64,000 bases of DNA. Source: Octopus sinensis (taxonomy: Eukaryota). Within the stretch, counting starts at the first letter, position 1, and each line of letters opens with the position of its first letter. The DNA lies in contig NC_043011.1 in NCBI RefSeq assembly GCF_006345805.1, forward strand, positions 64,182,464 through 64,246,463, in the 5' to 3' direction. A program made the position numbers and the translations under genes. The notes below the pieces were generated by a model. The model ran no database searches. It was not told the DNA's origin and saw only the letters and a program-made list of their open reading frames with translations. Of this stretch, positions 2,099-58,862 are shown one piece after another.

Positions 2099-2479
2099 GG
2101 CAATAGTCTTTCTGAAATAATAAGGAATGTACAGAACTAGTGTGTCATCAGAAATATTCGTAAATTTTGGTTTAGTATGAAATGAAAAAAAAACAAAATA
2201 AGACCTAAATGCAGGTTCGTTGATGTAATCTTTATTTATATATATCTCATTAAGTATCTTGTAACTGCAATAGAGAAGAGAAGCTCCATCATATCCTGTA
2301 ACGAAAAAATAATTACAGACGTTAATGAAACAAATTCTTCGGTGAAAGTTTTGCTGAAATTACATTAGATAATTTGAAGAGTATGTGTCAAGATTTACCA
2401 TTCTTGTTACAGTTATAATTGATTGTGCATTACACTAATCTCGTTATTTATTTTATAAAGATATTATTGTCGGACTCAT

Positions 2480-3389: not shown

Positions 3390-3465
3390 TCAATGTCGGC
3401 GATGTAAGATGACATAATGTACAGATTTTACGCACCTTTTTCTGGACAGTTCCAACACCACTATG
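3390..3465 (-). CDS. Candidate terminal exon 3C, copy 1: (R)[24 protein letters not shown]
   Basis: Strong acceptor cacttttaacatttgctttcag|C, phase-2 compatible, adds a fourth Cys. Present and open in all three copies (27241-27325, 42370-42445), with ATTAAA ~35 nt after the stop. Short enough to be chance. Confidence 0.3.
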
Positions 3466-3600: not shown

Positions 3601-4264
3601 GTGCACATTAGACATAAAAGCATAGCAATCTTTTCTATATGTCTGTAAAAAACTTAAAATATATACTTATTAGGAATGTATACATCACTTGACCAATTCT
3701 GGAAGAAATGGAAACGTGTTTCAAATAACAACTATTTCCAAAATCGATTTGACGAGATACGAACTTAAATTAGGAAATCTCAGACGTTCCATAAACTTTG
3801 TTCCTTCTATTCCTCCCAATGATTACCATAGAAAGAGTTGGGTTTTTTCACAAAAGTTTTACATTACCGTATCAGATAGAAATAAAAGTCTACAGTAGTA
3901 GCTAATGATAATATAAGTCATCAAAATGAAATGCGGCAAAATACTGAATTACAGCTTATTACTTTAGACAACAAAATATAAATAATGAATATATCTTACA
4001 CGACACGCCTTGTGAATGTATTGATCATAAAATTTGGCACATTCCCGACTTGTTTTATAAAAACACTTAGAATCTTTCCTAAGTATGCTGCAAAATAATC
4101 ATAAATCCGGAATTATATACAAAATTGATCACGTATTGGGTGCATCATAGATATTTCGAAATATCTTTAGAAAAGGCAGTCACAACAAACTTAGAATATT
4201 TTAATGTTTGTATATAATCTGTTACAATACGATAGGCATATCTCATAAAATATGTTATTCCGTA

Positions 4265-6485: not shown

Positions 6486-6589
6486 CTACCGGCAAAGATA
6501 ACTTTTTTGAGGATACGCTTTGAATGTCCAGTGGGGGTAATTGCATATTTTTTCAAACTGATGAGTGCATGACTCTTTCATCTCCACAC
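6486..6589 (-). CDS. Secreted Cys-rich peptide gene, copy 1, coding exon 2: (G)VEMKESCTHQFEKICNYPHWTFKAYPQKSYLCR*
   Basis: Long polypyrimidine acceptor (ttttttcttttgtttttttataatag|GT GTG GAG), phase 1 matching exon 1. Frame is open in all three copies, with invariant Cys, NYP, W, F and AYPQ despite up to 25% nucleotide divergence. Ends TGC CGG TAG (possible weak donor CG|GTAGAT after 6490). Confidence 0.82.
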
Positions 6590-10873: not shown

Positions 10874-10920
<47 letters not shown>

Positions 10921-10949
10921 TTATAAAAGAATATATATATCCATATACA

Positions 10950-13900
10950 CACACAAAAGAATATATATATCCACTAACACACACAAAAAATCCAAGCCCC
11001 CTGCAACAGTCAAAACCAGCCACTACACTAACCTCCACATTCCTACTCAATGCACAAGGTGTCAGCCCTTCCATCAATGCACAAAAATGGAAGGTCCAAT
11101 TCATTGAAGACTGGGTTGGTAACCATTCACACCACATCCCTTTCTTCATTCTCACTGAGACCCACCTTGACAACTCCCACTTGGAAGCCGAAGTGAGAGT
11201 GAAGAATTTCACAACCATCCGCGCGGATCGTATCGGCAGGAGGAAGGGTGGAACTGCCATTTTCCTGCATGATTCATTTACGGCAGATGGAAATAGTATA
11301 TTCTCCAACGGCTACTGTGAATCAGTCACCGTGCACAACAAAGCCAATGACCTGACAGTAATTGGGCTCTATAGGCCGCCCCAAACACCCATACTGTGCT
11401 TTAAAGAATGCCTCAACAGCATTAAGTGCTTTATTCAACAGTGCCATTCTAGCAACATACTCATGATGGGAGACTTCAATCTACCCTGTGTTGACTGGAC
11501 TACAAACTGTTTGAAACCAAGCACTCCCGCCTCAACCGCTGACAAAGAAGCAGCAGAGTCACTTTTCGACTTTACGAATGAGTTTTTCTTGTCCCAACTT
11601 GTCCTTGCACCAACAAGACATCAGAACATTTTGGACCTAGTGTTTAGTAACCACACTAACACTATACATAACGTTACAGTGGAAAAAACCCTTCTTTCAG
11701 ACCATGACATGGTTCTCTGTAACATGAAATTCCACCAGCCGAAAGCTAATCCTAGTGACCTTCCTCCAGCCCACCCATTTGACAACATGGATCTCCATAA
11801 AGCCAACTGGGATGCAATCAGGAACGAGCTATCAAATGTTGACTGGTCCTTTACACATACACACATCTCCACCAACCATAAAACATCTTGGCAGATCTTT
11901 GTAGACACCGTCACAGACATATGTGCAAAACACTCCCCACCAAGACCTGTGAACAAAAAGTGCAGAATCCCCCAAAACAGAAAAACCATTATCAGAAAAA
12001 TAAAAAGAACAAACAAAAAAATTAACAAACTAAAGTACTGCCAACAGCAACACACACATTCGACGGCTATCGCACTGCTTGAATCCAAAAAATATAACCT
12101 CCAACAATGCATGAAGACCCTCATCAATAACCAAAGATCAGCTGAGGAGAAGTGGGCCATTGAAAAAATCAAACTCAACCCCAAAGTGTTCTTTTCATTT
12201 GCGAGGAAACGCAGGGTCACTGTCTCCACTGTAGGCCCTCTAATTGACGAAACTGGCACTCTCCAAGATAATGCCAAATCCATGGCCGAGATACTGCAGA
12301 AACAATACTGCTCTGTTTTCAGCAATCCTGATATGGCCGATCTGGGCTGTATCAGTGATGTCAACCCCCAACACACTATATCGGACATAACGTTTAGTGC
12401 CCCTGATGTCTTAGCGGCGATAAACGAAATAAAACACAATTCAGCAGTAGGCCCCGATAGGTTCCCTGCTTGTGTCCTGAAGGTGTGTCGACACCAACTT
12501 GCATCTCCCCTTGCTAATCTGTGGAGAAACTCACTGGATGCTGGCTATATTCCAAAAAACCTTCTGTCCCAGTCTGTTGTCCCAGTTTTCAAAAAGGGAA
12601 ACAAGTCCCTTGCAGTGAATTACCGTCCGATCTCACTCACCTCTCATATCATCAAGGTATTTGAGAGGGTGGTGAGATCTCGAATAACCCAATTTCTGGA
12701 AAGCAACAGACGGCTGATCTCCAACCAACATGGGTTCCGTAATGGAAGGGACTGCCTAACGCAGCTCCTGCATCACTTTGAGGACATTTTGAGAGCTTTG
12801 GGAGAGGGCTCCAACACCGATGTCATCTACCTTGATTTCAGTAAGGCCTTCGACAGGGTCGATCACAAGATCCTATTGAAAAAACTATCCAACATTGGTG
12901 TCTCTGGAAAGTTACTGAAATGGATTAAGTGTTTCCTGACAGACAGATCTCAACATGTTGTAGTTGAAGGGGTAAAATCAAGCCCAGCCAAAGTCAGTAG
13001 TGGCGTTCCGCAAGGCACTGTGCTGGGCCCACTTCTTTTCATCATTTACATTAATGACATTAATGACATCATCAAGCACAGCAACATAAAAATCTTTGCA
13101 GATGACTCCAAGCTACAGAAGGTCATAAATGAGGCGAGTGACCGGACATGCCTTCAGTCAGATCTACTGGCTGTTATCCAATGGGCAGAAAAAACAATAT
13201 GCTGCTGAACGAGGATAAATTTGAGCTAATCCACTTTGGAAAAGAGGATGCCCTGAAACTCCCATACTCCCTTCCTTCAGGTGAAACTCTCGCGGCGTCC
13301 AACAACATCAGAGACTTGGGAGTAATTGTGGACAACAACGTAAGCTGGGCCACTCATATAAACACCAAAGTTGACATGGCCCGCAGAATGTGTTCCTGGA
13401 TTCTCAGAACTTTCCAGTCGAGAGATATCCACACCATTATCCTTCTCTTCTCCACTTTTGCCCGACCCCACCTTGAATACTGTTGTCCACTGTGGTCTCC
13501 CCACACAATACAAGGTATCATAAAAGTTGAAGCACCTCAAAGGGCAATCACAAAAAAGATAGATGGCATGACAGGCCTCGACTATTGGGGTCGACTAGAA
13601 AAGCTAAAACTCTATTCTCTCCAACGTCGTCGTGAGCGCTACATCATCTGCATGATGTGGAAAATATTCCATCAGCATTGCCCAAATGATGTTGGCATCA
13701 CCTTTAAGGTACATCCAAGGCTTGGGCCCCGTGCCATCCGCCCAAAACAAAAATCGCACTCTCATCTCATAACAACAATACGGCACAATTATTTCACCTC
13801 AATTGGCCCCGCTCTCTTTAACATTACACCAAAACGCATTAAAACAGAAACTGATCCTATAGGGTTCAAGAAGTCTTTGGACAGATTCCTTCAAGAAATC

Positions 13901-14071
13901 CCGGATAAACCCCCTACACCCGGATATGTCTCTGTAAACAATAACTCTCTACTTGAGTGGGCCATAGTGCCCAAATTCTGACTTGAAAGACTTCACCAGG
14001 TGGTGCTATTAAGTTAGACATGGCCTGGGCCAATAATGGCCGAAACCTATCAAAGTATCAAAGTATCAAAG

Positions 14072-14522: not shown

Positions 14523-14559
14523 CACAAATGAGAAACGCCAGGAAGATGTAGATTTTCAT
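14523..14559 (-). CDS. Secreted Cys-rich peptide gene, copy 1, coding exon 1 (signal peptide MKIYIFLAFLIC+G)
   Basis: Minus strand reads ATG AAA ATC TAC ATC TTC CTG GCG TTT CTC ATT TGT G|GTAAGA: Met-Lys, a hydrophobic run and a strong phase-1 donor. ATG, frame and donor are conserved in all three unit copies. Confidence 0.82.
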
Positions 14560-19918: not shown

Positions 19919-20699
19919 CAATATATATACATACAATACACAATACATACACATATATACACACCCACACACACACATATAAATTAATATATATACATTT
20001 ACATTTATATACACGTACATAAACATATACACATACATACATACACACACAAACACATATATCATATGAATAAATACGTATATAACTGTCTATATTCAAA
20101 CTTCGATACAAACATAGAGGTAAACATTTAGTTAAATCCATTTATTCTAACTTACTAATATATACTTCTATATCAAATAAAATTGATTAAATAAACATCC
20201 AAATAAACCTACTTCAAATATAAAGAGATTACATACATCTAGATTAATTTTTAAAAATTATAACAGAAATATAACAAAATATAAACTTAACTTTATTATA
20301 ATATAAATATATATATATTATATATCATATTATCAATACACAAAATAGACACTATTCAATAATAAATTAATCTAATTAAATAGCTAACTAAATTAATATA
20401 TCGATAGTTCAAATGCATTGTTCTATAATAGAATAAGTTATCATTATTAAAAATGTTTCCTATACTTACAATATTATAACCTTTCAAACTCTATATTCAA
20501 AAACCATTAAATATTTAGTAATACAATAAACGACTAAATATAATCTACCTATAAGTAAATAAAGAACCTAAATAACAATAATAAACTAAGACAAAACCTC
20601 ATAAAAAATTAGAAACACAACACTATTATGAAGTATTATATTTATAAAATTAATAACATATAACATTATTTATTTAATATAATATATAACAAACAAATT

Positions 20700-22300
20700 T
20701 TTATCATGTAATAAGTATTATAAAATCACCTACTAAATATTATAAATCACCTTCCAAAGTATTCACTAAATTATCATGGTTATAAAATAAAATTTCCTTA
20801 AACTCAGTTGAACATAAATAACAATAATTTCATCCTATTCTATATCATTTAGCCTTACTTATTATTTCCTACGTTAAATCATAATTAATATTTTGGGATT
20901 TAAGTCCCCATATGTACTTGCTAAGTCCAGTTGAGTTAAGTACGATTTTATTTTTAAATGAATGCATATGCGGTGTGATTCTTAATTTTATTTTAGAGGA
21001 AGTGGACCCTATATATATCGTGTTTAAGTTATTATTATTCCTATTATTCTGATTAAGTAATGTAACTATACATTTATACACTACATCGTTGATATCACAT
21101 TTATTTATTTAATTTGCATTTAGTTTTAACTCTACATGTACAGTTAATAAGTGTCTTATCTTTATTATTATTGGTATTATTATAAAATTTATTTTAAAAA
21201 ATAATTCAGTTTAAATTTGTTAAAAGAGAAAATGATGTTACCTACACTATTAGTGGTAGAATAACCTACTCCAAAGTTATTACGAGAGAAAATGTTTTTA
21301 TATTTAGGATTATCATGAATAAATTGTTCAATAATATCTAAAATCACTTTAATAATGTTCATTTTAATGTAAGCACCATAAGGAACAATTAACCAAATTT
21401 TATGCTTATTTTTCTTCTTCTTATTATTATTATCACTATCATACTTAATCATGTTATTATAACCATTATTATTACCATTACTATTATTATATTTCTTTAT
21501 AATATTATTAGATATAAAATTATAATTATAATTAACATTTAATGAATTATTAAAGTTATTATATTTTTTTAATTATATTATGTTTATTTTTATAATTACT
21601 AAAATTACTACTAATATTACTAACAAAATTATCATATTATTATTAATATTTTTATCTTTATTATTAATAGTTTTATCTTTATTTTTGATAAAAAATGTAA
21701 TATTACTATTATAACCTGCCTCTCTAAGGGCATCCTTGTAATAAGGTGCATGTTTATTAAAACTCTCTAGATCATAAGAAAAATGATGATCTACGTTACT
21801 TATATTATTAATCAACGATTTTTTAATTGATGGTGGGTGATTACTATTAACATTTATATATCTAAGGTTTTCATTGAGTTTATGATATGGTTGTGTTTTA
21901 CCCGTAATTAGATTAAAATTAACATCTAAATAATTAACAATAAAATTCTCATTATATATAGAAATACATAAACCATATCTTTTAAAGAAACTATAAAGTT
22001 TTTTCTTATGTAATTCTAGGTTCTTATTATTGCAATTTTTAATAATTAATAGAAGTTCAGTATATATAAGCTAAGTATATATTTATATTTAAGATTTCTA
22101 ATTTTTAAAGTTTAAATATTTTATAAGTCTTATGGTATAATATTATTGTTTTTCTATGTAAATATTGATGTTTATGTAATGATCTAATTATCGTATTTTT
22201 TCTATATAATTATTAAATATTAACTTTACGTTTATTCGTAAGACTTTACTTAGCCATAGAAATACATTATTCGTTAACAATTATACGAGTTGCTTAAAGT
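20700..22300 (-). mobile_element. Extremely AT-rich Penelope-like element relic (RT thumb + GIY-YIG)
   Basis: VNYLDVNFNL..PYHKLN..YINVNSNHPPSI, YKDALREAGY, KIWLIVPY..IFSRNNFGVGYS, YKCIV..IYIGST..R...H, CYLC. The YRDD region is unrecognisable. Confidence 0.8.
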
Positions 22301-22984
22301 TAGGTTTTATGTATATACATGTATTGATAGCATTAAATTTAGTCTTAAATAACTATATTTGCTGATAGTTATTTTATATTTATTATGATTATTATTATAA
22401 CTTTTATATTGTCCTTTTAAATCGATAACTGCTAGTAATATTCTTCCTATTGAGAAATGTTTTTGTAGTATGTATTTGATACTATATAACTAGGAATTGA
22501 TTTTTTTAATATTTTATTTTAACTATACTATTTTGAAAGTTATTAGTTAGCCAACGAGATATATAGATAGTTAATTTGCTATAGCGTTCGTTTAAGATTG
22601 TTGGTTTGTATTTTTTTGCAATTAGTTATTTCATCTGTAATATTTTAATATTTCTATTAGTAATGATGAATAATTAATTTATTAGGTATTTATTATACGT
22701 GCATATATATTTATTTATAGAAATAATTTTAGATCTTAATACTAATATTTATATATATTTATATATTTTCATTGATAATTTATATATTATTCAAATATTA
22801 TATATTTAATAATATGAATAGTCATATTTTAGTAAAATATTTATGTAATTAGATATTGACTATAACTGATATTAGATTATTTTATATATTTTTTAATAAT
22901 TAATCTTATTTCTATGTATTGGTCTATGATTTTCCCTGTTTGATTTGCTTAATAGGTGTTTTGTCTCTAATTTAATATAATTTT

Positions 22985-23265
<281 letters not shown>

Positions 23266-23469
23266 GCACATTTTGTTGTCCAGGCAGAAGAGGTGTATAC
23301 CGAATCGGTGTGTGTTTGGCTTGTCATTAAGGCATTGAAAGTGAACGTAGGAGATGTGTTTGTTTGCTCAGAATCAACATTCTGACCTGACTTTGTTTCT
23401 TTGTTCTTCGAATGAACATATTTATCATATCGTAGGCTGATAGATCTAACATCGCCTTTATCTCTACTC

Positions 23470-23870
23470 AGGTGACATACTGTTCAGGAAAGTTAATAAG
23501 AAAATATTGTTTCCGGGGCCTCTTTGCCCCTTTAATACTTCTATTATGCTTGATCCCCTCAATTTAGTATTATGGCAGGGTATCATTTGAGGTATATTAA
23601 TGTACAATTCTACGATTTGGTTTTCATGGATGATAAGAACCATTTTAGAATCAATGGAAAGCAGATCAAAAACTTAATGCAGACTGAAATATGCTGCACC
23701 AAAATTGTAGGTATCGAAATTGGCATAGAGATTTGGGCAATATTAGTCCTGAAAAGGGGAAGGTATTAATAGCGAAGTCATCCAATTACCAGATTATCAG
23801 AGATTACAATAATGGAAGGAAGTAAAGAGTTGTAAGCATCGAGGAGTATTGGTATCTGACTGATATTTAG
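23470..23870 (+). mobile_element. Old R4/Dong-like RT relic (family A); paralog 37600-38005
   Basis: LVFMDD, GIEIG..KRG and YKH.GVL relics of RT motifs (ORFs 23572-23769 and 37716-37913). Confidence 0.6.
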
Positions 23871-23972
23871 GAGGGTTTTTCCTGTCTATGTTTACTTGTT
23901 GTATTCCGATGTTATGACGTTTTCTGTTCTAACAGTCTAATCTGTCTAATGTATATGAAAAAAAAGATAATA

Positions 23973-24037
<65 letters not shown>

Positions 24038-25900: not shown

Positions 25901-27240
25901 TAATAATAATGAGTAGAAGGAGAAGAAGAAGTAGAAGAGGAAAAAGAAGGAGAAGAAGATGAAGAAGAAGAAAAGGAAGAAGAAGAAAAAATGAAGAAGA
26001 AAGGAAGAAGAAGAAAAAGAAGAAGAAGAAGAAGAAGAAGGAGAAAAAGAAGAAGAAGAAGAAGAAGAGAGGAAGAAGAAGAAGAAGAAGAAGAAGAAGA
26101 AGAAGAGAAGAAGAAAAAAAGAAGAAGAAGAAGAAGAAGAAGAAGAAGAAGAAGAAGAAGAAGAAGAAGAAGAAGAAGAAGAAGAAGAAGAAGAAGAAGA
26201 TGAAAAAGAAGAGGCAATAGTCTTTCTGAAATAATAAGGAATGTACAGAACTAGTGTGTCATCAGAAATATTCGTAAATTTTGGTTTAGTATGAAATGAA
26301 AAAAAAACAAATAAGACCTAAATGCAGGTTCGTTGATTATCTTATTTATATATATCTCATTAAGTAACTTGTAACTGCAAAGAAGAGAAGCTCCATCATA
26401 TCCTGTAAAGAAAAATAATTACAAACGTTAATGAAACAAATGTTTTGGTGAAAGTTTTGCTGAAAGTACATTAGATAATTTGAAGAGTATGTGTCAAGAT
26501 TTACCATTTTGTTACAGTTATAATTGATTGTGCATTGCACTAATTTCGTTAGTTATTTTATAAAGATATTATTGTCGGACTAACATCCTCACTCGGTAAA
26601 GACGGACATATTGGTTTCGGCATTTTGTCTGCAATTACCATTTGAATTCTAATTCCACAGTGGTCGACTTTGTATTCCATCCCACTGGTGTCGATGAAAT
26701 AAATTCCAATTGAACACTGGGGGTCGAGGTAATCCATATACTTCTCTAGCAAAATTGCCTACGTGTATCAAAATTTGAACTCAAGTAATTTAATGAACTT
26801 CTGTATTTAAATTCTGTTACAATTATATAATGATATTTTACTATTACAATAATAACTGTACATTAGTTACATTATTTATAATTGACGGATATTTGTCTTC
26901 ATCTTCTCTGTTGTTAACACAACATTTCGGGTGATGTACCTTCAGGTCTTCTTCAGGTGTCTTGGGTAAATTTTAAACCCGGGTTCTCATTCCTAAGGAA
27001 TTGTTCGATGTTATTATTAACATCTTGTTTGTTAACAACATACAAGATGACGACGAATGTCCATCGAATTGTGAATAATGTATATACTTTTCATAATCTC
27101 TTAAAAATAGATCTGAATTATAACTGCGTTGTGTATTACTATATTATAACGTAATTCCTGCACTTTTGTGAAGTTAAAAATAACCAGTTGGTAAATAACA
27201 TTTAGAGAGGGGTTTACTGTGAATATACCAATAATATTCC

Positions 27241-27325
27241 TTAATTCATATTTATTTGTCGATGTAAGATGACATAATGTAGAGATTTTACGCACCTTTC
27301 TCTGGACAGTTCCAACTCCACTATG
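27241..27325 (-). CDS. Candidate terminal exon 3C, copy 2: (R)IVELELSRERCVKSLHYVILHRQINMN*
   Basis: Acceptor cacttttatcacttgctttcag|C. The end is altered by a copy-2 deletion at ~27260. Confidence 0.28.
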
Positions 27326-27486: not shown

Positions 27487-30117
27487 CGTGCATATTAGAC
27501 ATAAAAGCATGACAATATTTTCTATATCTCTGTAAAAAGCTTAAAATATATTTATATTATGAATGTATGCAACACTTGGCCAATTCTGGAAGAAAAAGCG
27601 ATGCTTTTCATATATAAGACAAACGCAATAATTTAAGAGAAGTGGAACTCCTTCTTCACATTTTATGTGTATTTTACTAGTTTTTTAATATTGTTGATTT
27701 TGCTAAGTCTTCAAATAAAATAACTATTTTCATCAAATGATATTAAATATCCGCACATATATTTCTACATAGGATCATCAGTATTAAAATCATCATGTAA
27801 CATTATAAAAAAACGTCTACGGTCTTCTGTCCATGAGTTAGACTCAAATCGACCGAAGGCAAGTATTCGAAGAACAGTGAAAAATGCAGCTACATTAAAG
27901 GCCGTAGTACATATACCTTTCATTTATTAAAAGTTTATTTCCTTAAGGGGGATGCTTTAGAACCAAAAATAGTATTTATTAATAATTTCTATGTGTAAAT
28001 GTAAAATATTTATTAAAAATAATACTCGAATTAGGACGCCCTTAAAAAAAAGTGCCCGCGTAGGATCAAGAAATATATCGACAGATTGTGTACGTATGTC
28101 GACAGATTGTGTACGTATGTCGACAGATCGTGTACGTATTCGCTGGATTGCATCATGTAATAAGAATCGTACGTGAAGTGACAAGCATTATAAACACATT
28201 CCAAATTCGACTTGACGATATACGAAATCAAATCAGGAAATCTCAGATGTTCCATAAGTTTCGTTCCTTTAATTCCTCCCTAGGTTTTCCATAAAAAGAG
28301 TTGGCTTTTACACAATAATTAAGGCATAAGTTTTCAATTACAGTATCAGGTACACACAAAATTGTACACGAGTAGCTAACGTTAAAATAAGTCATCAAAA
28401 TGAAATACGGCAAAATACTGACTTACAACTTATTACTTTAGACAACAAAATATAAATAATGAATGTATCTTACATGACACGCCTTGTGAATGTATTTATC
28501 ATAAAATTTGGCACATTCGTGACTTGTTTGATAAAAACACTTAGAATCACGCTTAAGTATACTGTAAAATAATAATAAATCAAGAATTATATAAAAATTG
28601 AACACGTATTGAGTGCACCATAGACATTTCCATAAATTTTTAGAAAAGACAGTCGCAACAAACTTAGAATAATTTAATGTTTTTATATAATCTGTTTCAA
28701 TATGATAAGCATATGTGAGAAAATTTGATATTCCGTATTGAAGCTGACAGATGTAATAAGATTTTGAACCCATCAGATGAGTGAACAGTGCTTACAGAAT
28801 GCAGTCGGGATCTGGACACACTTTGGTGGGTCGCTAAAGAAAAGTGGTAGGTTACACTAAGCGAACACGAGGCAGACACATGTGAAAAGGAACGCACACG
28901 CAAACACACGTACATAAAACAAGCAGCATTCAGTTTCCCTCAACCAAATCTCACAAATCGTCTATCTGTCCGGAAGTTTTTATTTGTCCTCTATTGCGTT
29001 TTTGTTCCATGATATATATATAGAGAGAGAGAAAGAGAGAGAGAGGGAGAGAGAGAGGTGATGAGAGGTAATTATGTCAATGAGACACAAATATGTTAGG
29101 TAATTGTGAGTAAGTGCAATGGATAGTCAACTGTTAAGCTCCAGATTCGGTGATTATGGGAATAAGGAGTGCAACGTAGGTCATATATCAGCATGTGTAT
29201 ATAGAATATGTTTTTTCAGAATTAAATGAAAAAACCTAGGCTGTGAATATTTTAGAACCTTTATATATAGAAGGTCTTACAGCAGTTTCTCGGTTATTTA
29301 TTATATCACTTCATTTATTATAGCCCTTCATAGGGTGTGAGAAAATGTTTAAGCAATAGATAATTTTTATAAGATATAAAATAGAGAGTGAAGTGTAACA
29401 TTGAAAATAGATGTGAGATATGTAGGGATAATGCTTGCCTAAAGAATGTATCTCCAAATACAATATCCTTGCATATCTCACATCTACTTTTATTCCACTA
29501 TTTCATTGGAAAGAGATCTGTAAGATATATATATATCTGTGTGTGTGCATTCTTGGTTGTGTGTGTTTATGTGTGTGCGTGTGTGTGTGTGTGTTTCTTT
29601 ACACACACACACGCACACGTTGCTACGTTGGCGTGTTTCTTTACATTTCATAACACTTTGCTGAAAAACTTATGTGATGTACGTACTTATTCTAGTTATT
29701 ATATAATATATACTTAGTTTATTATCATTATTCCGTATGTCATAAATGAAACACGCTCTTATTATTATTGAATTTCAATGTATTTTTAAAAGTTGCAATG
29801 CTATATATGTAAAAAAGACATTTATTGTAAAAGATGTTTGGCGAAAATGCTATGGGTTTGTAAAAGTTGAAAGGCAAAATTTGTTAAATATTAACGTAAT
29901 ATAATGTGTGTGTGTGTGTGTTTGTGTGCTTGCATGTGTGTCTATGTGTGTGTTTGTGTGTCTGTGTGTGTGTGTAGTTAGTGAGGGACAGAGACAGAGA
30001 GAGTCGGGCAGATTCGAGAGATTTATAATGACTGGAGAAAGAGATGGAATTACGTAGCATTAATATATAGTATTATAAATACTTGGCATATTATTAAATG
30101 TAGTCGTGCGAATATAT

Positions 30118-30221
30118 CTACCGGCAAACAAAACCTTCTTGGGGATACGCTTGGAACATCCATTTGGGATAATTACATGCTTCTTTATACTCATCAAAAC
30201 AAGAATGTTTCATCTCCACAC
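30118..30221 (-). CDS. Secreted Cys-rich peptide gene, copy 2, coding exon 2: (G)VEMKHSCFDEYKEACNYPKWMFQAYPQEGFVCR*
   Basis: Acceptor tttttcttttgtatttcaaattag|GT GTG GAG. Same 100-nt exon length, no indels or stops, Cys spacing C-x7-C-x16-C preserved. Confidence 0.82.
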
Positions 30222-32200
30222 CTAATTTGAAATACAAAAGAAAAATATATAAATGAAGCTTTATTTAAAAGTTATGCCAGTAAATATTAGAATACATTCT
30301 TAAGTAGAATACTCACCTCATACTCAATTAAAATAATTGAAATATCTTTGAACTTTGCCTATAAATGTCAATTTTAAATGTGTTTTACTACGACATCTAC
30401 AAATGAAGAAACAGTCACTCCCACATTTTCAAAAATAGATTTGCCTACGCCTTTATATTCTAAATAATTTTGCATGAATATTATGATACCAAATTTTATG
30501 TTGCAAATACTTCACGGACTAAAATGGAAATTAATTTATTATCAAACATTGTTGCACCTCAGTAATTAAAATATATTTTATCATAACTTAGAAATTAAAG
30601 AGACGTAAAAAAAAGTTTATGATATTGGATCAAAGTTGATGAATTTATATATAATCATTTCTACTACAGGCAAAACGCCTGAAATTTGCAGGGATGGAAG
30701 TAGTCGATTATACCGACCCCAGCGGCAGAATCGTTAGCACGACGGACGAAATGCTTAGCAGTATTTCGTCTGTCGCTATGTTCTGAGTTCAAATTCCGCC
30801 GAGGTCGACTTTGTCTTTCATCATTTCGGAGTCGATTAAATAAGTACTTGTTACGCACTCGGGGCGATATGTTCGACTTAATCCGTTTGTTTGTCATTGT
30901 TTGTCCTCTCTGTATTCAGCACCATGTGGGTAGTAAATAAATAGGTATTTAATCTATCATGCCAAAAGAATGTAAAGAAAATTCGACCGCGGCAGAATTT
31001 GAACTCAGAAAAATCGACGGGTGAAAAGCTGCTACACATTTGCCCGGCGTGCTTACGATACTGTGAGCACGCCGCCTTCATGAAGCTTTAAATAATGGCA
31101 AAGGAATTGTTTGGTGGAACTTTCCCATTCGAAAGACAAGTTTGAAAGATTCCCGAGTAGCTTCTTCTTTTCCTTCTTTCTTTATCTTTAATGAAAACAA
31201 ATTTCTTTTTCTTTCATCCATTACTTACAGGTCCATTACTTCGAGTTCCACTGCTTGGAAAATTTTTTCTCGTAGTAAAATATCGTGAGGCATGCCCCTA
31301 ATTCTCAACTATTTCTTGCTAAATCATGAGGGAAATTGTGTTTTATTTTGTAAGATTATATCTTTTAGAAATCAGAATATATAACTCGGAGTTGTCGGAT
31401 AGTTATTGTTATTGCTAAGCAGAGTAAATAATTTCTTTTTATTAAAGCTTTCCCTTCTTTTTCATAATATTTGGGTTGTTTCATACAGTATATCTATAGC
31501 ATATAACCACTGATATAAACAGCAAACGTTAAATTCAGCGTTAAATCTGAGAGGTTTTGTACAGAGAACTTAAACATGGTTTGATAAGCGTGTGGAGACG
31601 AGGCAATGGGGGGTATGCAATGTTTCGTATGGCTGGGACGTTCGAAAATGTATAGCAACGCCACAGTCCAATCAAGAGCATGTCCGTCACATTTTTCCTT
31701 TATCTGCTCAATTTTGCACCGGGAATACGTCAACCATGTTCGAACCATCGATCGAGAGTTCTGCAGCGATGTTTTCGAGTGTTTGATGTAGAACATTCGG
31801 TGAAAGAGACCGGAATTTCATGCGGTTGTCAAGGACGAATCGCATAAAGCCATCGTATAGTTTTGGGATAAGGACTTCCATACCGGATTCGAAATGTAGA
31901 AGAAACGCTTGGATCGATGTAGGTGCAAATATATTAACTTCAGCTAGAGATACAAACAACACAAGTTACAGTTTTAAACATCTGTCCTTTCCAAACAGCA
32001 TTACAAGAGCGAAAACATCTCAAAATACTAGTGAATGTCAGTCGTCAAAAATGTCTACTCAGGACACTGTCATATCCGTCCTCCATTAGAGTCATTATCA
32101 AAGCAGATTGTGCAACCTGATGACGTATCCCTTTGAAGGTTTTCAGGAACAATTTGAAATATCTACTTGAACTGTACACACACACACACACATATAATAT

Positions 32201-33992: not shown

Positions 33993-34029
33993 CACAAATG
34001 AGATACGCCAGGAAGATGTAGATTTTCAT
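33993..34029 (-). CDS. Secreted Cys-rich peptide gene, copy 2, coding exon 1 (MKIYIFLAYLIC+G)
   Basis: Same ATG...TGT G|GTAAGA exon as copy 1, with one substitution (TTT>TAT, F>Y). Confidence 0.8.
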
Positions 34030-41011: not shown

Positions 41012-42369
41012 GAAGAAGAAGAAGAAGAAGAAGGAGAAGAAGAAGAAGAAGAAGAAGAAGAAGATGAAAAAGAAGAGGCAATAGTCTTTCTGAAATAATT
41101 AGGAATGTACAGAACTAGTGTGTCTTCAGTAATATTCGTAAATTTTGGTTTAGTATGAAATGAAAAAAAACAAAATAAGACCTAAATGCAGGTTCGTTGA
41201 TGTAATCTTTATTTATATATATCTCATTAAGTAACTTGTAACTGCAATAGAGAAGAGAAGCTCCATCATATCCTGTAAAGAAAAAATAATTACAGACGTT
41301 AATGAAACACATTTTTCGGTGAAAGTTTTGCTGAAAGTACATTAGATAAGTTGAAGAGTATGTGTCAAGATTTACCATTCTTGTTACACTTATAATTGAT
41401 TGTGCATTGCACTAATCTCGTTAGTTATTTTATAAAGATATTATTGTCGGACTAACATCCTCACTCGGTAAAGCCGGACATATTGCTTTCGGCATTTTGT
41501 CTGCAATTACCATTTGAATTCTAATTCCACAGTGGTCGTCATTGTGTTCCATCCCACTGGTGTCGATGAAATTAATTCCAATTGATCACTGGGGGTCGAG
41601 GTAATCCATATACTTCTCTTGCGAATTTGCCGTCCGAGTATCAAAATTTGAACTCAAGTAATTTAATGAACTTCTGTATTTAAATGCTGTTACAATTATA
41701 TAATGATATTTTACTATTACAAAAATAACTGTACATTATTTACGTTATTTATAATTGACGGATATTTGTCTTCATCTTCTCTGTTGTTAACACAACGTTT
41801 CGGGTGATGTACCCTCCAGCCTTCTTCATGTGTCTTGGGTACATTTTAAACACCGGGTTCTCATTCCTAAGGTATTTTTCGATGTTATTATTAACATCTT
41901 TTTTGTGAACAAAAAACAAGATGACGACGAATATCCGTCGAATTGTAAATAATGTATATACTGTACATAATTCCTTATCTCATTAATATAGAACTGAATT
42001 ATGACTGTGTTGTGTATTACTATATTATAACGTAATTCCTGCACTTGTGCGAAATTGAAAATAATCAGTTGGTAAATAACATTTTGAAAGTGCTTTACTG
42101 TGAATATTCCAATAATATTTCTTCATTCATATTTATTTGTCCCTGAAGATAGCTGTAGTATTCGTTAAGTGGATATATTGTAAAAGGTACTTCATGGTAT
42201 TACAAACGTCTATAGTTACTCGAATTCTACTTAAATATATTTTTCTGGAATTGTACATAAATATCGCAAAACTTGTTAATGTAGTATTTCGTTATTCGTA
42301 GTGACGATGATTTCCGGTGTTTTTGGGTCTTTAATTATTTATAATACAATGTTATTAGGTAGATATTAT

Positions 42370-42445
42370 TCAATCTCGGCGATGTAAGATGATATAATGT
42401 ACAGATTCTACGCACCTTTTTCTGGACAGTTCCAACACCACCATG
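42370..42445 (-). CDS. Candidate terminal exon 3C, copy 3: (R)[24 protein letters not shown]
   Basis: Acceptor cacttatatcacttgctttcag|C. Open frame with the Cys conserved. Confidence 0.28.
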
Positions 42446-42644: not shown

Positions 42645-44695
42645 GTGCACATTAGACATAAAAGCATGACAATCTTTTCTATATCTCTGTAAAAGTCTTA
42701 AATATATTCTTATTATGGCCAATTCTGGAAGAAAAAGTGACCATGCTTTTCATACATTAGACAAACCCGGTAATTTAAGAAAAGAGGAACTCCTTCTTCA
42801 TATGTTATGTGTGTTTTACTCTTTGTTTATTATTGTTGATTTTGCTAAGTCTTCAGATAAAATAACTATTTTCATCAAATGTTATTATATATCCGCACAT
42901 ATATTTCTACATAGAATTATCTGTATAAAAAACGTCTACTGGTCCTCTGTCCATTAATTAGACTCAAAGTGACCGAATGCAAGTATTCGAAGAACAGTGA
43001 AAAATGCAGCTACATTAAAGGCCGTAGTACATAAAACTTTTATTTATTATAAGTTTCTTTCCCAACGGAGGATGCTTTAGAACCAAAAATAGTATTTATT
43101 ATTAATTGTTATGTGCGAATTACTTAAAATTATATCAAACATAATACTCGAATTTGGACATGCCCTTAAAAAAATGGGCCCGCTTAGGATCCTGAATTAC
43201 GTCGACAGACTTGTGTACGTATTTCTGTTTCAACAGCCATCGCAAAAATCAAGTAATACGCTGCCGGTGCATAGATATCTCTTAAGTCGCATCATTCACT
43301 GGATTGCATCAGGTAATAAGAATCGTATTTCAAGTGACAAGAATTATAAACCAATTCCAACGTCGATTTGACGAGATACGAATTAAATTAGGAAATCTCA
43401 GACGTTCCATAAATATCGTTCCTTCTGTTCCTCCCTATGTTTACCATAGAAAGAGTTGGGTTTTATACAATAATTTAGGCATAAGTCTTCTATTACAGCA
43501 TCAGATACAAATAAAAGTCTACACGAGTAGCAAACGATAAAATAAGTCATCAAATTGAAATAGGTCAATATACTGAATTACAACATATTACTTTAGACAT
43601 CAAATTATAATTAATGTATGTAGCTTACATGACACGCTTTTCGAATGTATTCATCATAAAATTTGGCACAATCGTGACTTGTGTTATAAAAACACTTTGA
43701 ATCATTCTTAAGTATACTGCAAAATAATCAGAAATCAGGAATTATATCAGGAATTGAAGATGACGGCTGTAATAAGATTTTGAACACATTACATGAGTGA
43801 ACACTGCGTGTCACAGCTGGCAAGTTCACAGAATGCATTCGGGATCTGAACACAATTTGGAGGGTCACTAAAGAAAAGGGCTGGATTATACTGGGCGAAA
43901 ACGATGCAGAAACAAGTTAAAAGCTTCTGTCTTAACGATTATCTGTTTCATTCCTCCACACGATTCGATATAAAACAATTTCACCGAGAACCGCTTGATG
44001 AGATATGTTAATCATACCAACGGCATCATCTACAACCACTGGGTTTCATTTGGGGCTGATGTTCACGAAAGAGTAATCTGCACAGGTTTTATGTGTGTTC
44101 AGTGTGAGTCTTCTATGTTAGAGGCCAAAATATTTTCATCAGATTAATCCACCAATCCAGATATTTGAAGTCGTAACAAACTTCGTATCAGACGTGGGCA
44201 TGAAAACTGTACGTCGCCCTATTTGCAAATTAGATCCTGCACCCTATGACATTCAGTTTTTCCCAACATTGTGAATGAACAAGAGAAGTCGTTTGATGTA
44301 TTTTAAATTATAAAGGACACATAAAAAGGATCGTGATCACAGTCAATTTCGAGGGCACCCGTGGATCATTCACGCAGAGGCTGGAACGCAGAGGTTGGAA
44401 CGATGCAATTGGTGCAATGATGACTGACGAACATAATTTGGACGTTATTAAGAAACTTTAGAACTTCATTGAAATGAATGCATGTTTTTTTCTGCAATAA
44501 ACCTTGTAAATGATATCTGTGTTTCAATACATTTCAAAGATCTTGGATAAATATACTTTATTTCAAAATCGCAATTGAAAATTTTCTCTATGAAGAGCAA
44601 ATAAAATGTTTGCTACTATGCCTGTGTAATAAATATCTTTCTTTGGCGAAATTGGAATTAGTTTGGTCGTTTTAGCATAGACACTACACATCGGG

Positions 44696-44839
<144 letters not shown>

Positions 44840-44857
44840 AATATATATAATAGAAGG

Positions 44858-44908
44858 AGCTTCTACAGGACTAGAACTGTTTCATTCAAAAGAAATCATC
44901 AGGAAGCT
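44858..44908 (-). ncRNA. Type I hammerhead ribozyme fold at the left terminus of the Penelope palindrome
   Basis: AGCUUC-CUGAUGA-UUUC(UUUU)GAAU-GAAA-CAG(UUCUAGUC)CUG-UA^-GAAGCU. Perfect 6-bp stem I, intact core, 4-bp stem III, GUA cleavage triplet. Stem II closes with a U.U pair. Confidence 0.72.
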
Positions 44909-46285
44909 AGTAGACAAGAGTTGTTTTGGCATCTATACATTTAGGCAGGATTAAATGGGTGGTGATGGGGGACTTTTTTTGGGGTAGGCATGGCGCAAAA
45001 CTGTCATTATTAGGGGAGTGGTCAAAGGAATCGGTGGTAAAGTAGATAAAAGAATAAATAAAATAATAAAAAGAAAAATAGAGTTTTAGCTAAGAAATGA
45101 GACTCTCACTTGTACATCTACATATATATATATACATATATATACACCCACATATTCACATATATCTATACATATACATACATACCCACAGATACATACA
45201 TATATATATATATATACATACATACACATACATATACATATATATATATAGATATATATACATATATATACACAAACCCATGTACGTACACACAAATACA
45301 CATATACATACATATATATACATATATGTATACACACTCGCACATATATATACATACACACATATATACACATGCATATACATGCACACACATACACACG
45401 CATTTTTATTCTCTTATTTTAATTTTATTATAACTACTTTTGTTTATATCTTTATTTTTATCTTGACCTCGGTCAGCCGGTCTCAAGGAATGATCTAGAG
45501 ATTCCGTTTATCTATCTACTCACTGATACGAACGCAAGCACTCACTCACGCCCACACACTCACACGTACACACATACTCATACGCACACGCACGTGTTAT
45601 ATTCATACACGTATACATCTACATACATTCACGTACATTCACATACGTACACGTACCTACTGATTCATACCTACACGCATACACATACATACCTCAATAC
45701 ACCCACAGAAGACTAGTCCATACATATACACTAATTAATATATATACACATATACATATACACATACATACACATACATACATATATATACACATATACA
45801 TATATATATATACATATATATACATATACATATACATACACATATACATTCATACATATATACACATACACACATATATATATATATATATGCGTACACA
45901 TACACACACACACGCGCATCTATATATACACATAAGTACATACATGCATAAATGTATACATATGTCTATAGATATGCATACGTATCCATACACACACGCG
46001 CCTCCTTATGTTCATAAATACATACATGCATACAGGCATATACATATATACATACATGCATATTCAAATAATACTAATAATAATAATAATAATAATAATA
46101 ATAGTAATAATAATAAATATATTTACGTGCAGTTACCCATTATACAGAGGGATACATACATATAAACATACACATATATACCTATTTACACATATGTATA
46201 TATACATACATACATACACACATAACACTACATAACAACATATACATAAACACAGAAGCGTACACACACATATATATATATATAT

Positions 46286-46342
<57 letters not shown>

Positions 46343-46438
46343 CATATATACACACACATATACACACAAATATGCATATACATTTACACATACATATATA
46401 CACATACACATACACATACATATATATATATATATATG

Positions 46439-46472
<34 letters not shown>

Positions 46473-49680: not shown

Positions 49681-49834
49681 GTACACTTGTATATATGTAT
49701 TGTATAATATGTACAGAAATGAAGGGTGTTAGTAGGAATATACGCATGTATGTGAGGGCGTGTTATATGTATGTGTATGTGTATGTACATGTGTATGTGT
49801 ATGTGTGTGGTTTTTTTTATATATATTTATATAT

Positions 49835-49881
<47 letters not shown>

Positions 49882-53966: not shown

Positions 53967-54070
53967 CTACCGGCAAAGAAAATTTTTTTGAGGATACGCA
54001 TTGAATGTCCAGTGGGGGTAATTGCATGCTTTTTCAAACTGTTGAGGGCATGACTCTTTCATCTCCACAC
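53967..54070 (-). CDS. Secreted Cys-rich peptide gene, copy 3, coding exon 2: (G)VEMKESCPQQFEKACNYPHWTFNAYPQKNFLCR*
   Basis: Acceptor ttttttcttttgtctttttaaattag|GT GTG GAG. Open frame with the same Cys frame. Confidence 0.82.
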
Positions 54071-58825: not shown

Positions 58826-58862
58826 CACAAATGAGAAACGCCAGGAAGATGTAGATTTTCAT
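58826..58862 (-). CDS. Secreted Cys-rich peptide gene, copy 3, coding exon 1 (MKIYIFLAFLIC+G)
   Basis: Coding part identical to copy 1 with GTAAGA donor, although the adjacent 5' UTR is diverged. Confidence 0.82.

What the first reader, a model, noticed from the sequence alone, without database searches (positions are those of the whole stretch)
30118..30221. Mature-peptide exon is hypervariable while the signal exon and flanking intron are conserved
Hand counts. Exon 2 differs at 25/100 nt between copies 1 and 2 (5 synonymous, 20 in amino-acid-changing codons) and at 7/100 nt between copies 1 and 3, all non-synonymous (T/P, H/Q, I/A, K/N, S/N, Y/F). The signal exon differs at only 0-1 of 37 nt. 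Intron 6721-7030 vs 30351-30660 differs at 4/310 nt, and the mariner relic at ~24/310 nt (~8%) between copies 1 and 2. Changes include charge swaps (E/K, K/E, H/K, K/E) between fixed Cys/Pro/Trp/Tyr scaffold residues. Established: a conserved signal with an accelerated mature region is the signature of conotoxins and of immune and gamete-recognition peptides. Inference: diversifying selection on target specificity, or introns homogenised by conversion around exons that resist it.
Basis: partly seen in the sequence, partly recalled or inferred. Interest (0 to 1): 0.8.

Follow-up and report, generated by a model that had tools for sequence, protein, structure and literature searches.

The report
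Divergent exon in octopus tandem genes
One internal exon of a small, octopus-only cysteine-rich protein gene, present in three tandem copies, is about three times more diverged in copy 2 than the DNA around it, but silent and amino-acid-changing differences are raised alike, so this looks like an old sequence patch that escaped copy-to-copy homogenisation, not proven conotoxin-style positive selection.

Summary
Exon 2 differs at 25/100 nt between copy 2 and copies 1 or 3, and at 7/100 between copies 1 and 3. The signal exon differs at 0-1/37 and the intron piece at 4/310.

The 79-nt core (codons 18-44) is the top-scoring divergent segment in 2.1 kb, here and in the O. vulgaris orthologues (permutation p<0.0005). 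The copy 1 vs 3 value is ordinary.

The gene model is wrong. The 'TAG stop' is a splice donor (CG|GTAGAT). Exon 2 is the second of five exons of a roughly 104-aa, octopus-restricted protein: a signal peptide, a 6-Cys domain and a hydrophobic C-tail. An O. bimaculoides protein is colinear with exons 2-5.

Positive selection is not shown. Omega is about 0.7 and not different from 1. Silent divergence in exon 2 (0.36-0.43) is raised as much as replacement divergence. Orthologues differ at only 1/100 nt.

Gene conversion is active. The 'conserved intron' includes a tract of at least 173 bp where copy 2 matches copy 1 and its O. vulgaris orthologue does not.

Best reading: the core has a deeper genealogy than its flanks, a 'peak of divergence' in tandem paralogues undergoing conversion. 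Whether selection maintains it is untested.

The parts
30122..30221 (-). Copy 2, exon 2 (100 nt, phase 1 in and phase 2 out). This is the finding. It encodes G13-R46 (GVEMKHSCFDEYKEACNYPKWMFQAYPQEGFVCR). Bases 30118-30121 (CTAC on +, GTAG on -) are the start of intron 2, not a stop codon.
30129..30207 (-). Hyper-divergent core of copy 2 exon 2 (codons 18-44). It differs at 25/79 nt from copy 1 and from copy 3.
   Evidence: Maximal-segment scan; codon table
6490..6589 (-). Copy 1, exon 2
53971..54070 (-). Copy 3, exon 2
33993..34029 (-). Copy 2, exon 1 (37 nt, MKIYIFLAYLIC+G, donor GTAAGA). A TATA-like TATATAG lies about 55 nt upstream of the ATG.
14523..14559 (-). Copy 1, exon 1 (signal)
58826..58862 (-). 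Copy 3, exon 1 (signal)
28474..28561 (-). Copy 2, exon 3 (88 nt; ILKRDSKCFYQTSHECAKFYDKYIHKACH; acceptor ttttacag, donor GTAAGA). It carries the second set of three Cys.
4000..4087 (-). Copy 1, exon 3
43629..43716 (-). Copy 3, exon 3
27296..27325 (-). Copy 2, exon 4 (30-nt micro-exon, HSGVGTVQRK; acceptor gctttcag, donor GTGCGT)
3436..3465 (-). Copy 1, exon 4 ([10 protein letters not shown])
42416..42445 (-). Copy 3, exon 4 ([10 protein letters not shown])
26346..26402 (-). Copy 2, exon 5 coding part (DMMELLFFAVTSYLMRYI*, with an in-frame 3-nt deletion). AATAAA overlaps the stop codon.
2236..2295 (-). Copy 1, exon 5 coding part (hydrophobic C-terminal tail, stop codon, AATAAA)
41213..41272 (-). 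Copy 3, exon 5 coding part
30491..30663 (.). Minimal recent interlocus conversion tract in intron 1 of copy 2. Copy 2 is identical to copy 1 (c1 6861-7033) and to O. vulgaris copy 1, but differs at 8-9% from its own O. vulgaris orthologue.

Best explanation
The interval is exon 2 of a five-exon gene on the minus strand. The gene sits in segmental-duplication units of about 24 kb, with three copies in the window and at least a fourth beyond its start.

The window comes from an Octopus vulgaris-group genome. The gene family was found only in Octopus.

The predicted product is about 104 aa. It has a signal peptide (exon 1 plus the first five codons of exon 2) and a domain of about 60 aa with six Cys (C-x7-C-x16-C from exon 2; C-x7-C-x11-C from exon 3). 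These are followed by a short small-residue linker (exon 4) and a hydrophobic C-terminal tail (exon 5). The overall layout is that of a GPI-anchored or C-terminally processed surface or secreted protein.

The 79-nt core of exon 2 in copy 2 has a deeper genealogy than the DNA around it. It is either an old paralogue lineage retained there, or a patch imported from a more distant array member. Meanwhile interlocus gene conversion and unequal exchange have mosaically homogenised the rest of the units to about 1-19% divergence.

This is the 'peak of divergence' pattern described for tandem duplicates under gene conversion.

Shown: the gene structure by comparative evidence, the peak, the equal elevation of silent and replacement differences, active conversion next to the exon, and slow change between orthologues.

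Inferred: that the peak persists because conversion of the core is selected against (functional divergence of copy 2, whose core has net charge about 0 against about +3 in copy 1). Also inferred: the cell-surface or secreted function.
For: Gene model.
- The phases match across introns (1, 2, 0, 0). All splice sites are GT/AG, although the exon 2 donor (GTAGAT) is weak.
- The ORF is intact in all three window copies and in two O. vulgaris orthologues. The only exonic indel is in-frame.
- The product aligns without gaps to O. bimaculoides A0A0L8HFY8 across exons 2-5.
- AATAAA follows the exon-5 stop. No AATAAA or ATTAAA was seen, by eye, in the roughly 200 nt after the 'TAG' of exon 2.

Peak.
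- The maximal-scoring segment is codons 18-44 in both genomes, p<0.0005.

Deeper genealogy rather than replacement-specific acceleration.
- Exon 2 pS is 0.36-0.43 against 0.06-0.12 in exons 3-5 (Fisher p 0.009-0.06).
- Exon 2 pN is 0.26 against 0.075 (p<=4e-4). Omega is similar in both parts.
- Silent differences exceed the local flank rate: 5-6 of 18 sites against 9-10%, p 0.003-0.03.
- ML omega is 0.64-0.74, not different from 1.

No current hypermutation or acceleration.
- Orthologues differ at 1/100 nt in exon 2, against 1.1-2.8% in the flanks.

Conversion is active.
- There are runs of 21 and 29 like-patterned informative sites, p<2e-4.
- A run of 19-20 consecutive sites has c1 = v1 = c2 but not v2, 270 nt from the exon.

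Outgroup.
- The O. bimaculoides protein agrees with copies 1/3 at 9 of the 13 copy-2-specific exon-2 residues and with copy 2 at none (alignment; counted by eye).

Concept.
- Teshima & Innan 2008, as summarised in PMC3924837, describe the red/green opsin exon 5 peak in duplicates about 24 kb apart.
Against: - The peak edges are abrupt. Divergence drops to the 10% background within about 15 nt on both sides. Selection against conversion predicts a gradual decline over a tract length. Abrupt edges fit a patch import or coding-restricted substitution better.
- Nearly all of a 24-kb unit would have to be homogenised except 79 nt.
- The silent-site evidence rests on 5-6 differences. It is not significant against the deepest non-coding divergence of 17% (p 0.07-0.18).
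- Recent changes in exon 2 are all replacements: 7 between copies 1 and 3, plus K26Q and D22N between orthologues, giving 9 replacement : 0 silent. That hints at positive selection.
- No RNA evidence for the five-exon model or for expression was available.
- The exon 2 donor GTAGAT is weak.
- The structure model was unusable (pLDDT 43).
Confidence: 0.55

Rival explanations
1. There was a burst of positive (diversifying or neofunctionalising) selection on the exon-2 core of copy 2 after duplication. On this view exon and flanks share one genealogy of about 10%, and replacements were driven in at about three times the neutral rate.
For: - dN of 0.28-0.32 against flank divergence of about 0.10: 19 of 84 replacement sites against 8.6-10%, p 7e-5 to 5e-4.
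- Copy 2 has 13 private residue changes in exon 2 and 3 in exon 3 (alignment; counted by eye).
- The changes reshape charge (E25K, K26E, H32K, K41E).
- Recent changes are 9 replacement: 0 silent.
- The peak edges are abrupt and coincide with the coding core.
Against: - Silent divergence in the same core is equally raised: pS 0.36-0.43, p 0.003-0.03 against the flanks.
- Omega is 0.64-0.74, with LRT against 1 of 0.5 or less.
- Orthologues show no acceleration.
- With only three to five sequences, site models have no power.
Confidence: 0.22
2. Relaxed constraint or incipient pseudogenisation of copy 2. On this view the exon-2 core simply drifts.
For: - Omega is not different from 1.
- The number of unchanged codons (15 of 30) is about what uniform neutral change predicts (my estimate from pN).
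- Copy 2 has a 3-nt deletion in exon 5 and a Y9 change in the signal peptide.
Against: - Drift cannot exceed the neutral flank divergence by about three-fold.
- The ORF, all splice sites, all six Cys and the aromatic residues are intact in copy 2 and in its O. vulgaris orthologue.
- The deletion is in-frame and is absent from the orthologue.
- Exons 1, 4 and 5 are more conserved than their flanks.
Confidence: 0.08
3. Locally targeted hypermutation of the exon, as has been proposed for conopeptide genes, raising both silent and replacement changes.
For: Both classes of change are raised in a sharply bounded tract.
Against: - Orthologues differ at 1/100 nt in exon 2, which is no more than the flanks.
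- Copies 1 and 3 differ at 7/100, which equals the background.
- No repeat or hairpin feature marking the tract was seen on reading the sequence.
Confidence: 0.05
4. This is not a real gene: the ORFs are chance ORFs in duplicated AT-rich DNA.
For: - No transcript evidence was obtainable.
- The family has no Pfam or PDB relatives.
- The only annotated proteins are an N-terminally truncated model and a chimeric model.
Against: - Five exons with compatible phases and GT/AG sites are conserved in five copies.
- The ORF is colinear with an O. bimaculoides protein.
- A signal-like N-terminus, a TATA-like element and AATAAA are all present.
- There are no frame-shifting indels in the exons, although indels are common in the flanks.
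Confidence: 0.1

Closest known systems
'Peak of divergence' in tandem duplicates undergoing interlocus gene conversion (Teshima & Innan 2008; human red/green opsin exon 5, reviewed in PMC3924837). Related cases: Tigriopus GOT1 'islands of divergence' (PMC3728101) and ruminant CEACAM1 paralogue escape from concerted evolution (PMC7042247).
   Same: - Tandem copies lie about 24 kb apart.
- Flanking introns are kept similar by conversion, with a recent tract demonstrated here.
- A short exon-centred block of high divergence is present.
   Different: - Here the plateau is high (about 10%) and the peak edges are abrupt rather than sloping.
- No functional difference between the copies is known.
- Selection on the peak is untested.
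Conserved-signal, hypervariable-mature peptide families of molluscs: conopeptide superfamilies (own knowledge) and Mytilus MgCRP-I (PMC4558851).
   Same: - Mollusc, small Cys-rich secreted product, multi-copy family.
- Nearly invariant signal exon with a phase-1 intron after it.
- A second coding exon of about 100 nt followed by a phase-2 intron, as in MgCRP-I.
- A variable region between fixed Cys residues.
   Different: - The variable part is an internal exon, not the last one.
- A second Cys-bearing exon, a micro-exon and a hydrophobic tail follow it.
- There is no dibasic propeptide cleavage site.
- Omega is not above 1.
- Cys codons are not position-specifically conserved: 2 of the 3 Cys in exon 2 switch between TGC and TGT.
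- No sequence similarity to either family was found.
MHC class II DRB1-type pattern: old exon-2 lineages embedded in young, homogenised introns (own knowledge; see also PMC12674619).
   Same: The exon core has a much deeper genealogy than the adjacent introns, and recombination or conversion reshuffles the flanks.
   Different: - These are paralogues in an array, not alleles.
- There is no evidence of balancing selection and no population data.
Small GPI-anchored Cys-rich surface proteins (Ly6/uPAR family; RGM N-terminal domain).
   Same: - N-terminal signal, short disulfide-rich domain and hydrophobic C-terminal tail preceded by small residues.
- A weak sub-threshold Pfam RGM_N match in three divergent members.
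   Different: - Six Cys, not 8-10, and no CCxxxxCN motif.
- Predicted helical, not three-finger.
- The RGM_N score of 13-17 bits is below the 24.2-bit cut-off, and a PDB profile search found no RGM.

Membership tests
Conotoxin-like gene superfamily (conserved signal, hypervariable mature toxin) | Signal-peptide exon nearly invariant among paralogues | tested here: met
   The signal exon differs at 0-1/37 nt. However, it lies within a conserved block of about 350 bp that includes the promoter and the start of the intron.
Conotoxin-like gene superfamily (conserved signal, hypervariable mature toxin) | The variable region is the mature peptide, encoded by the terminal coding exon and ending at a stop codon | tested here: not met
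   The 'TAG' is part of the donor CG|GTAGAT. The ORF continues through exons 3-5 in five copies and is colinear with A0A0L8HFY8.
Conotoxin-like gene superfamily (conserved signal, hypervariable mature toxin) | dN/dS above 1 in the variable region | tested here: not met
   Omega is 0.64-0.74 for copy 2 vs 1/3 and 1.85 for copy 1 vs 3. All LRTs against omega=1 are 0.5 or less. Only pairwise tests were possible with three to five sequences.
Conotoxin-like gene superfamily (conserved signal, hypervariable mature toxin) | Position-specific conservation of Cys codons | tested here: not met
   C20 and C28 are TGC in copies 1 and 3 but TGT in copy 2.
Conotoxin-like gene superfamily (conserved signal, hypervariable mature toxin) | Expression in a venom or salivary gland | not testable with these tools
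   No transcript data were available.
Peak of divergence under interlocus gene conversion (Teshima-Innan) | Tandem paralogues with demonstrable conversion in the flanks | tested here: met
   Informative sites are mosaic, p<2e-4. A lineage-specific tract of at least 173 bp is present.
Peak of divergence under interlocus gene conversion (Teshima-Innan) | A local block whose divergence, silent sites included, exceeds that of the flanks | tested here: met
   25/79 nt against about 10%, p<0.0005. pS is 0.36-0.43 against 0.06-0.12 in exons 3-5.
Peak of divergence under interlocus gene conversion (Teshima-Innan) | Divergence declining gradually away from the selected target | tested here: not met
   Divergence drops to about 10% within about 15 nt on both sides.
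Peak of divergence under interlocus gene conversion (Teshima-Innan) | Selection maintaining a functional difference at the peak | not testable with these tools
   This needs population data, more paralogues and a functional assay.
Pfam RGM_N (PF06535) | Score at or above the Pfam gathering threshold (24.2 bits) | tested here: not met
   Scores are 13.4-16.7 bits, E 0.009-0.1, in three members. A PDB profile search returned no RGM hit.
Ly6/uPAR (three-finger) domain | 8-10 Cys with a C-terminal CCxxxxCN motif and a beta-rich fold | tested here: not met
   There are six Cys, no CC pair and no Pfam UPAR_LY6 hit. The low-confidence model is all-helical.
GPI-anchored protein | N-terminal signal peptide, plus a C-terminal hydrophobic tail preceded by a small-residue omega site and a spacer | tested here: inconclusive
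   By inspection only: MKIYIFLAFLICG at the N-terminus, then [11 protein letters not shown] and MMELLFSIAVTSYLMRYI. The tail is only moderately hydrophobic. No GPI predictor was available.

The most novel reading that the evidence does not exclude
An octopus-restricted family of small six-Cys, possibly GPI-anchored surface proteins carries a cassette-like hypervariable module, the exon-2 core. Distinct ancient types of this module would be kept apart by selection against gene conversion within a tandem array. That would make it a lineage-specific recognition system, for example gamete, self/non-self or chemotactile recognition, with trans-specific exon lineages.
Probability: 0.2. Interest if true: 0.6.

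Novelty: new member of a known kind. Interest (0 to 1): 0.35.

Why it matters
This is a clean invertebrate example of exon-limited divergence inside an actively converting tandem array. It lies in a gene family with no known relatives outside Octopus.

It also shows how two things can mimic a 'conotoxin-like accelerated mature peptide':
- choosing a recently converted intron as the neutral yardstick;
- reading a GTAG splice donor as a stop codon.

If selection does maintain the two exon-2 types, the family would be a candidate cephalopod-specific recognition or surface protein worth expression and population study.

The work also flags mis-annotation of the locus in public gene sets: a chimeric O. 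vulgaris model and an N-terminally truncated O. bimaculoides model.

Tried and rejected
- Two-exon, 46-aa peptide model. The word-index search found nothing and the exact look-up found nothing. I rejected the model after the HMM search of 1.8 billion representatives returned an O. bimaculoides protein that continues past the 'stop'.
- P0003 and P0004 from that search are low-complexity and bacterial repeat proteins, so they are spurious.
- The exact look-up of P0001 DNA failed, so no O. bimaculoides nucleotide sequence was available for dS.
- Pfam gave only sub-threshold hits (RGM_N and others).
- The PDB profile search gave nothing meaningful.
- AlphaFold2 with a four-sequence alignment gave pLDDT 43, so I ran no fold search.
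- A literature search for peptide motifs and the UniProt accession gave 0 papers.
By eye, a degenerate HFDNAP...SY..-like motif is present on the + strand.
- Rfam found no tRNA or SINE family in 6900-7600.
- The overlap of variable positions between independent comparisons was not significant (hypergeometric p of about 0.2, my calculation).

Full report
**What is in the window**

The window is AT-rich eukaryotic DNA (GC about 33%) full of microsatellites. Self-comparison shows three segmental-duplication units of about 24 kb. The repeated gene lies on the minus strand.

A protein-profile search of 1.8 billion representative proteins found only two real relatives:
- an uncharacterised Octopus bimaculoides protein, A0A0L8HFY8 (P0001);
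- an Octopus vulgaris 'hypothetical predicted protein' (P0002).

The O. vulgaris locus that encodes P0002 is L001 (GCA_951406725.2, OX597831.1:16484376-16529906). It is colinear with window positions 41076 down to 1 at 95-98% identity. The window is therefore from the O. vulgaris species group, either a sister species or another haplotype. L001 supplies orthologues of copies 1 and 2, here called v1 and v2.

**Checking the observation**

- Exon 2 differs at 25/100 nt between copies 1 and 2. Five differences are in purely synonymous codons and 20 in replacement codons.
- Exon 2 differs at 25/100 between copies 2 and 3.
- Exon 2 differs at 7/100 between copies 1 and 3, and all seven are replacements.
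- Exon 1 differs at 1, 0 and 1 of 37 nt.
- Intron 6721-7030 vs 30351-30660 differs at 4/310.
- The putative mariner block differs at 27/301.

Against the local non-coding rate (9.4-9.7%), 25/100 gives p of about 5e-6 to 8e-6. Exon 2 is the top window of 242 (c1-c2) and of 192 (c2-c3) across the entire units.

A maximal-segment scan over 2.1 kb selects exactly codons 18-44: 79 nt with 25 mismatches, permutation p<0.0005. This holds for c3-c2 and independently for the O. vulgaris pair v1-v2. For c1-c2 the segment runs a little further, into the polypyrimidine tract.

The copy 1 vs copy 3 value, by contrast, is ordinary.
- The background is 6.9%, giving p=0.54.
- The best segment in that comparison lies elsewhere, in the intron.
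- The 7 replacement: 0 silent split has p=0.24.

The O. bimaculoides protein instead reads straight on from '...YLCR' into 'ILKNDSKCFYDTTHDCAKFYDNYLLKAC...'.

The window contains the matching exons in every unit.

| Exon | Length | Product | Splice sites | Copy 1 | Copy 2 | Copy 3 |
|---|---|---|---|---|---|---|
| 3 | 88 nt | ILKxDSKCFYxTSxxCAKFYDxYIxKAC(H/R) | ...ttt(g/a)cag acceptor, GTAAG(A/C) donor | 4000-4087 | 28474-28561 | 43629-43716 |
| 4 | 30 nt | H(S/G)GVGTVQ(K/R)K | gctttcag acceptor, GTGCGT donor | 3436-3465 | 27296-27325 | 42416-42445 |
| 5 | 57-60 nt | DMMELLFSIAVT(S/R)YLMRYI* | AATAAA overlaps the stop | 2236-2295 | 26346-26402 | 41213-41272 |

Exon 2 therefore ends at ...TGC CG, followed by the donor GTAGAT. 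The 'stop' is the start of intron 2.

The intron phases (1, 2, 0, 0) all match. The ORF of 103-104 codons is intact in three window copies and two O. vulgaris copies. The only exonic indel is an in-frame 3-nt deletion. The product aligns without gaps to the O. bimaculoides protein.

Exon 1 (MKIYIFLAFLIC + G, donor GTAAGA) was found 3.8-8 kb upstream in each unit, with a TATA-like TATATAG about 55 nt before the ATG.

Exons 1, 4 and 5 are more conserved than their flanks.

There is no RNA evidence, and the exon 2 donor is weak. The model is therefore well supported comparatively but not proven.

**What the protein looks like**

The product has these parts:
- a signal peptide, with probable cleavage around ICG|VEM (by inspection);
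- a domain of about 60 aa with six Cys, three from exon 2 and three from exon 3;
- a small-residue stretch (HSGVG) and a short polar spacer;
- a moderately hydrophobic C-terminal tail.

This layout is compatible with a GPI-anchor signal or a C-terminal propeptide. I could not test that here.

Pfam gives only a sub-threshold RGM_N match: 13-17 bits against a 24.2-bit cut-off, though it is seen in three divergent members. A PDB profile search gives nothing. AlphaFold2 gave an all-helical but unusable model with pLDDT 43. The family is, as far as these databases show, restricted to Octopus.

**Is the divergence driven by selection on amino acids?**

- Nei-Gojobori gives dN 0.28-0.32 and dS 0.40-0.49 for copy 2 vs copies 1/3.
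- Pairwise ML gives omega of 0.64-0.74, with LRT against omega=1 of 0.2-0.5. For copy 1 vs 3, omega is 1.85 with LRT 0.33.

The key point is that silent sites are raised too.
- In the exon-2 mature part, pS is 0.36-0.43, against 0.06-0.12 in exons 3-5 of the same gene pairs (Fisher p 0.009-0.06).
- pN is 0.26 against 0.075 (p<=4e-4).
- Omega is therefore about the same inside and outside the peak.

The five silent changes sit in the conserved scaffold codons (S19, C20, C28, Y30, P39). They exceed the flank rate, with p 0.003-0.03. Replacement-specific acceleration does not predict this.

**Orthologues show no ongoing acceleration**

Between the window and O. vulgaris, exon 2 differs at 1/100 nt in each copy (K26Q in copy 1; D22N in copy 2). 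The surrounding 2.1 kb differs at 1.1% for copy 1 and 2.8% for copy 2. The copy-1-type vs copy-2-type difference (23-25/100) is the same in both genomes.

The two exon-2 types therefore predate the split of these genomes and have barely changed since. This argues against a currently active exon-targeted mutator.

The O. bimaculoides protein shares the copy-1/3 state at 9 of the 13 residues private to copy 2, and shares the copy-2 state at none (alignment; counted by eye). That fits either an older origin of the copy-2 type or a long copy-2 branch.

**Gene conversion is active right next to the exon**

Three-way informative sites are strongly mosaic:
- a run of 21 consecutive sites with c1=c2 but not c3, at about 6870-7040;
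- a run of 29 sites with c1=c3 but not c2;
- both with p<2e-4.

With the orthologues added, a run of 19-20 consecutive sites (c1 6861-7033 = c2 30491-30663) has c1 = v1 = c2 but not v2.
- In the 200 alignment columns that span the tract, c1-c2 differ at 0-4%.
- Over the same columns v1-v2 differ at 8-14% and c2-v2 at 8-9%.

So copy 2 was overwritten by copy 1 in the window's lineage, 270 nt from exon 2, without entering it. Another 150 bp (c1 6721-6871) is about 2% diverged in both genomes.

Elsewhere the units range from about 1% to 13-24% divergence, the highest values being in non-coding DNA around exon 3. Coalescence depth therefore varies widely along the unit. Against that deepest non-coding divergence, exon 2's 25% is only marginally high (p 0.03-0.08).

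**Best explanation**

The exon-2 core of copy 2 has a deeper genealogy than its surroundings. This is a 'peak of divergence' in tandem duplicates that exchange sequence by conversion, as described by Teshima & Innan 2008 and illustrated by the red/green opsin genes (PMC3924837). Related cases are GOT1 in Tigriopus (PMC3728101) and CEACAM1 in ruminants (PMC7042247).

The core may have been retained from an old duplication, or imported as a short patch from a more distant array member. At least a fourth copy exists beyond the window start, because its exon 1 is at L001 44313-44349.

The abrupt edges of the peak fit a patch, or coding-restricted change, better than the gradual decline expected from selection against conversion. 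The edges lie in the invariant GVEMK codons on one side. On the other side they lie in the invariant CR codons plus 30 invariant intron bases.

Whether selection maintains the difference is untested. Copy 2's core has net charge about 0, against about +3 in copy 1. The recent 9 replacement : 0 silent changes in exon 2 are suggestive but not significant.

**Comparison with known systems**

The conotoxin and MgCRP-I picture is a conserved signal with a hypervariable mature peptide (PMC4558851). It matches only superficially.
- Matches: the signal exon is conserved, and the exon sizes and phases even resemble MgCRP-I.
- Mismatches: the variable exon is internal, omega is not above 1, the Cys codons are not conserved, and no sequence similarity exists.

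Membership in RGM_N or Ly6/uPAR was tested and not met. I file this as a new member of a known kind of phenomenon, in an uncharacterised, lineage-restricted gene family.

**Caveats**

- Only three to five sequences were available, so site-model tests have no power.
- No O. bimaculoides DNA and no transcripts could be obtained.
- Copy 3's gene model spans a 100-N assembly gap (48333-48432). The gap lies inside an 8-kb duplicated block within its intron 2. Its exons 1-2 and exons 3-5 may therefore not belong to one physical copy. This does not affect the exon-2 comparisons.

Noticed in passing
window 10866-13981 (+), inside intron 1 of copy 1: A nearly intact non-LTR retrotransposon with endonuclease and reverse-transcriptase ORFs of 780 aa and 277 aa. 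It is present in copy 1 only, and explains why that intron is 8 kb rather than 3.8 or 4.75 kb. A diverged relative lies at about 50539-51163 (-).
   Followed up: partly
window 44839-52696, gap at 48333-48432: A 100-N assembly gap lies at the centre of an 8-kb block of inverted and direct duplicates rich in microsatellites, inside intron 2 of copy 3. It is absent from copies 1 and 2. It is probably a scaffolding artefact or a foldback insertion, and copy 3's gene model crosses it.
   Followed up: partly
L001 10001-35531 (O. vulgaris gene model P0002); window 31228-31293, 28474-28560, 21240-21494, 6516-6593: The annotated O. vulgaris 161-aa 'hypothetical predicted protein' is a chimera. It joins an intronic ORF of copy 2, exon 3 of copy 2, an AT-rich intergenic ORF and exon 2 of copy 1. 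It skips copy 2's own exon 2. The O. bimaculoides model A0A0L8HFY8 lacks exon 1.
   Followed up: yes
L001 44313-44349 (beyond window position 1): Exon 1 of a fourth tandem copy, identical to the signal exon of copies 1 and 3, lies downstream of copy 1 in O. vulgaris. The array is therefore larger than the window shows.
   Followed up: partly
window 6460-6489, 30092-30121, 53941-53970 (-): The first 30 nt of intron 2 (GTAGATATATTCGCACGACTACATTTAATA) are invariant in all three window copies. The first 10 nt (GTAGATATAT) are also identical in both O. vulgaris copies, which is all that was read there. This comes right after a weak donor, so the stretch may be a splicing element.
   Followed up: no
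window 26346-26402 (-): Copy 2's exon 5 has an in-frame 3-nt deletion (…LLFSIAV… becomes …LLFFAV…) that its O. vulgaris orthologue lacks. Copy 1 has R88 in the tail where all the others have S.
   Followed up: partly
window about 7040-7460, 30670-31090, 54520-54930: Two SINE-like elements lie in opposite orientation in intron 1 of every copy (…GTTCTGAGTTCAAATTCCGCCGAGGTCGAC… and its near reverse complement). They resemble the abundant octopus tRNA-derived SINE as I recall it. Rfam gave no hit.
   Followed up: partly
window 20001-24000: An extremely AT-rich stretch (GC 0.20-0.22) lies between units 1 and 2. It contains poly-Asn-like ORFs that ab initio annotation turned into an exon.
   Followed up: no
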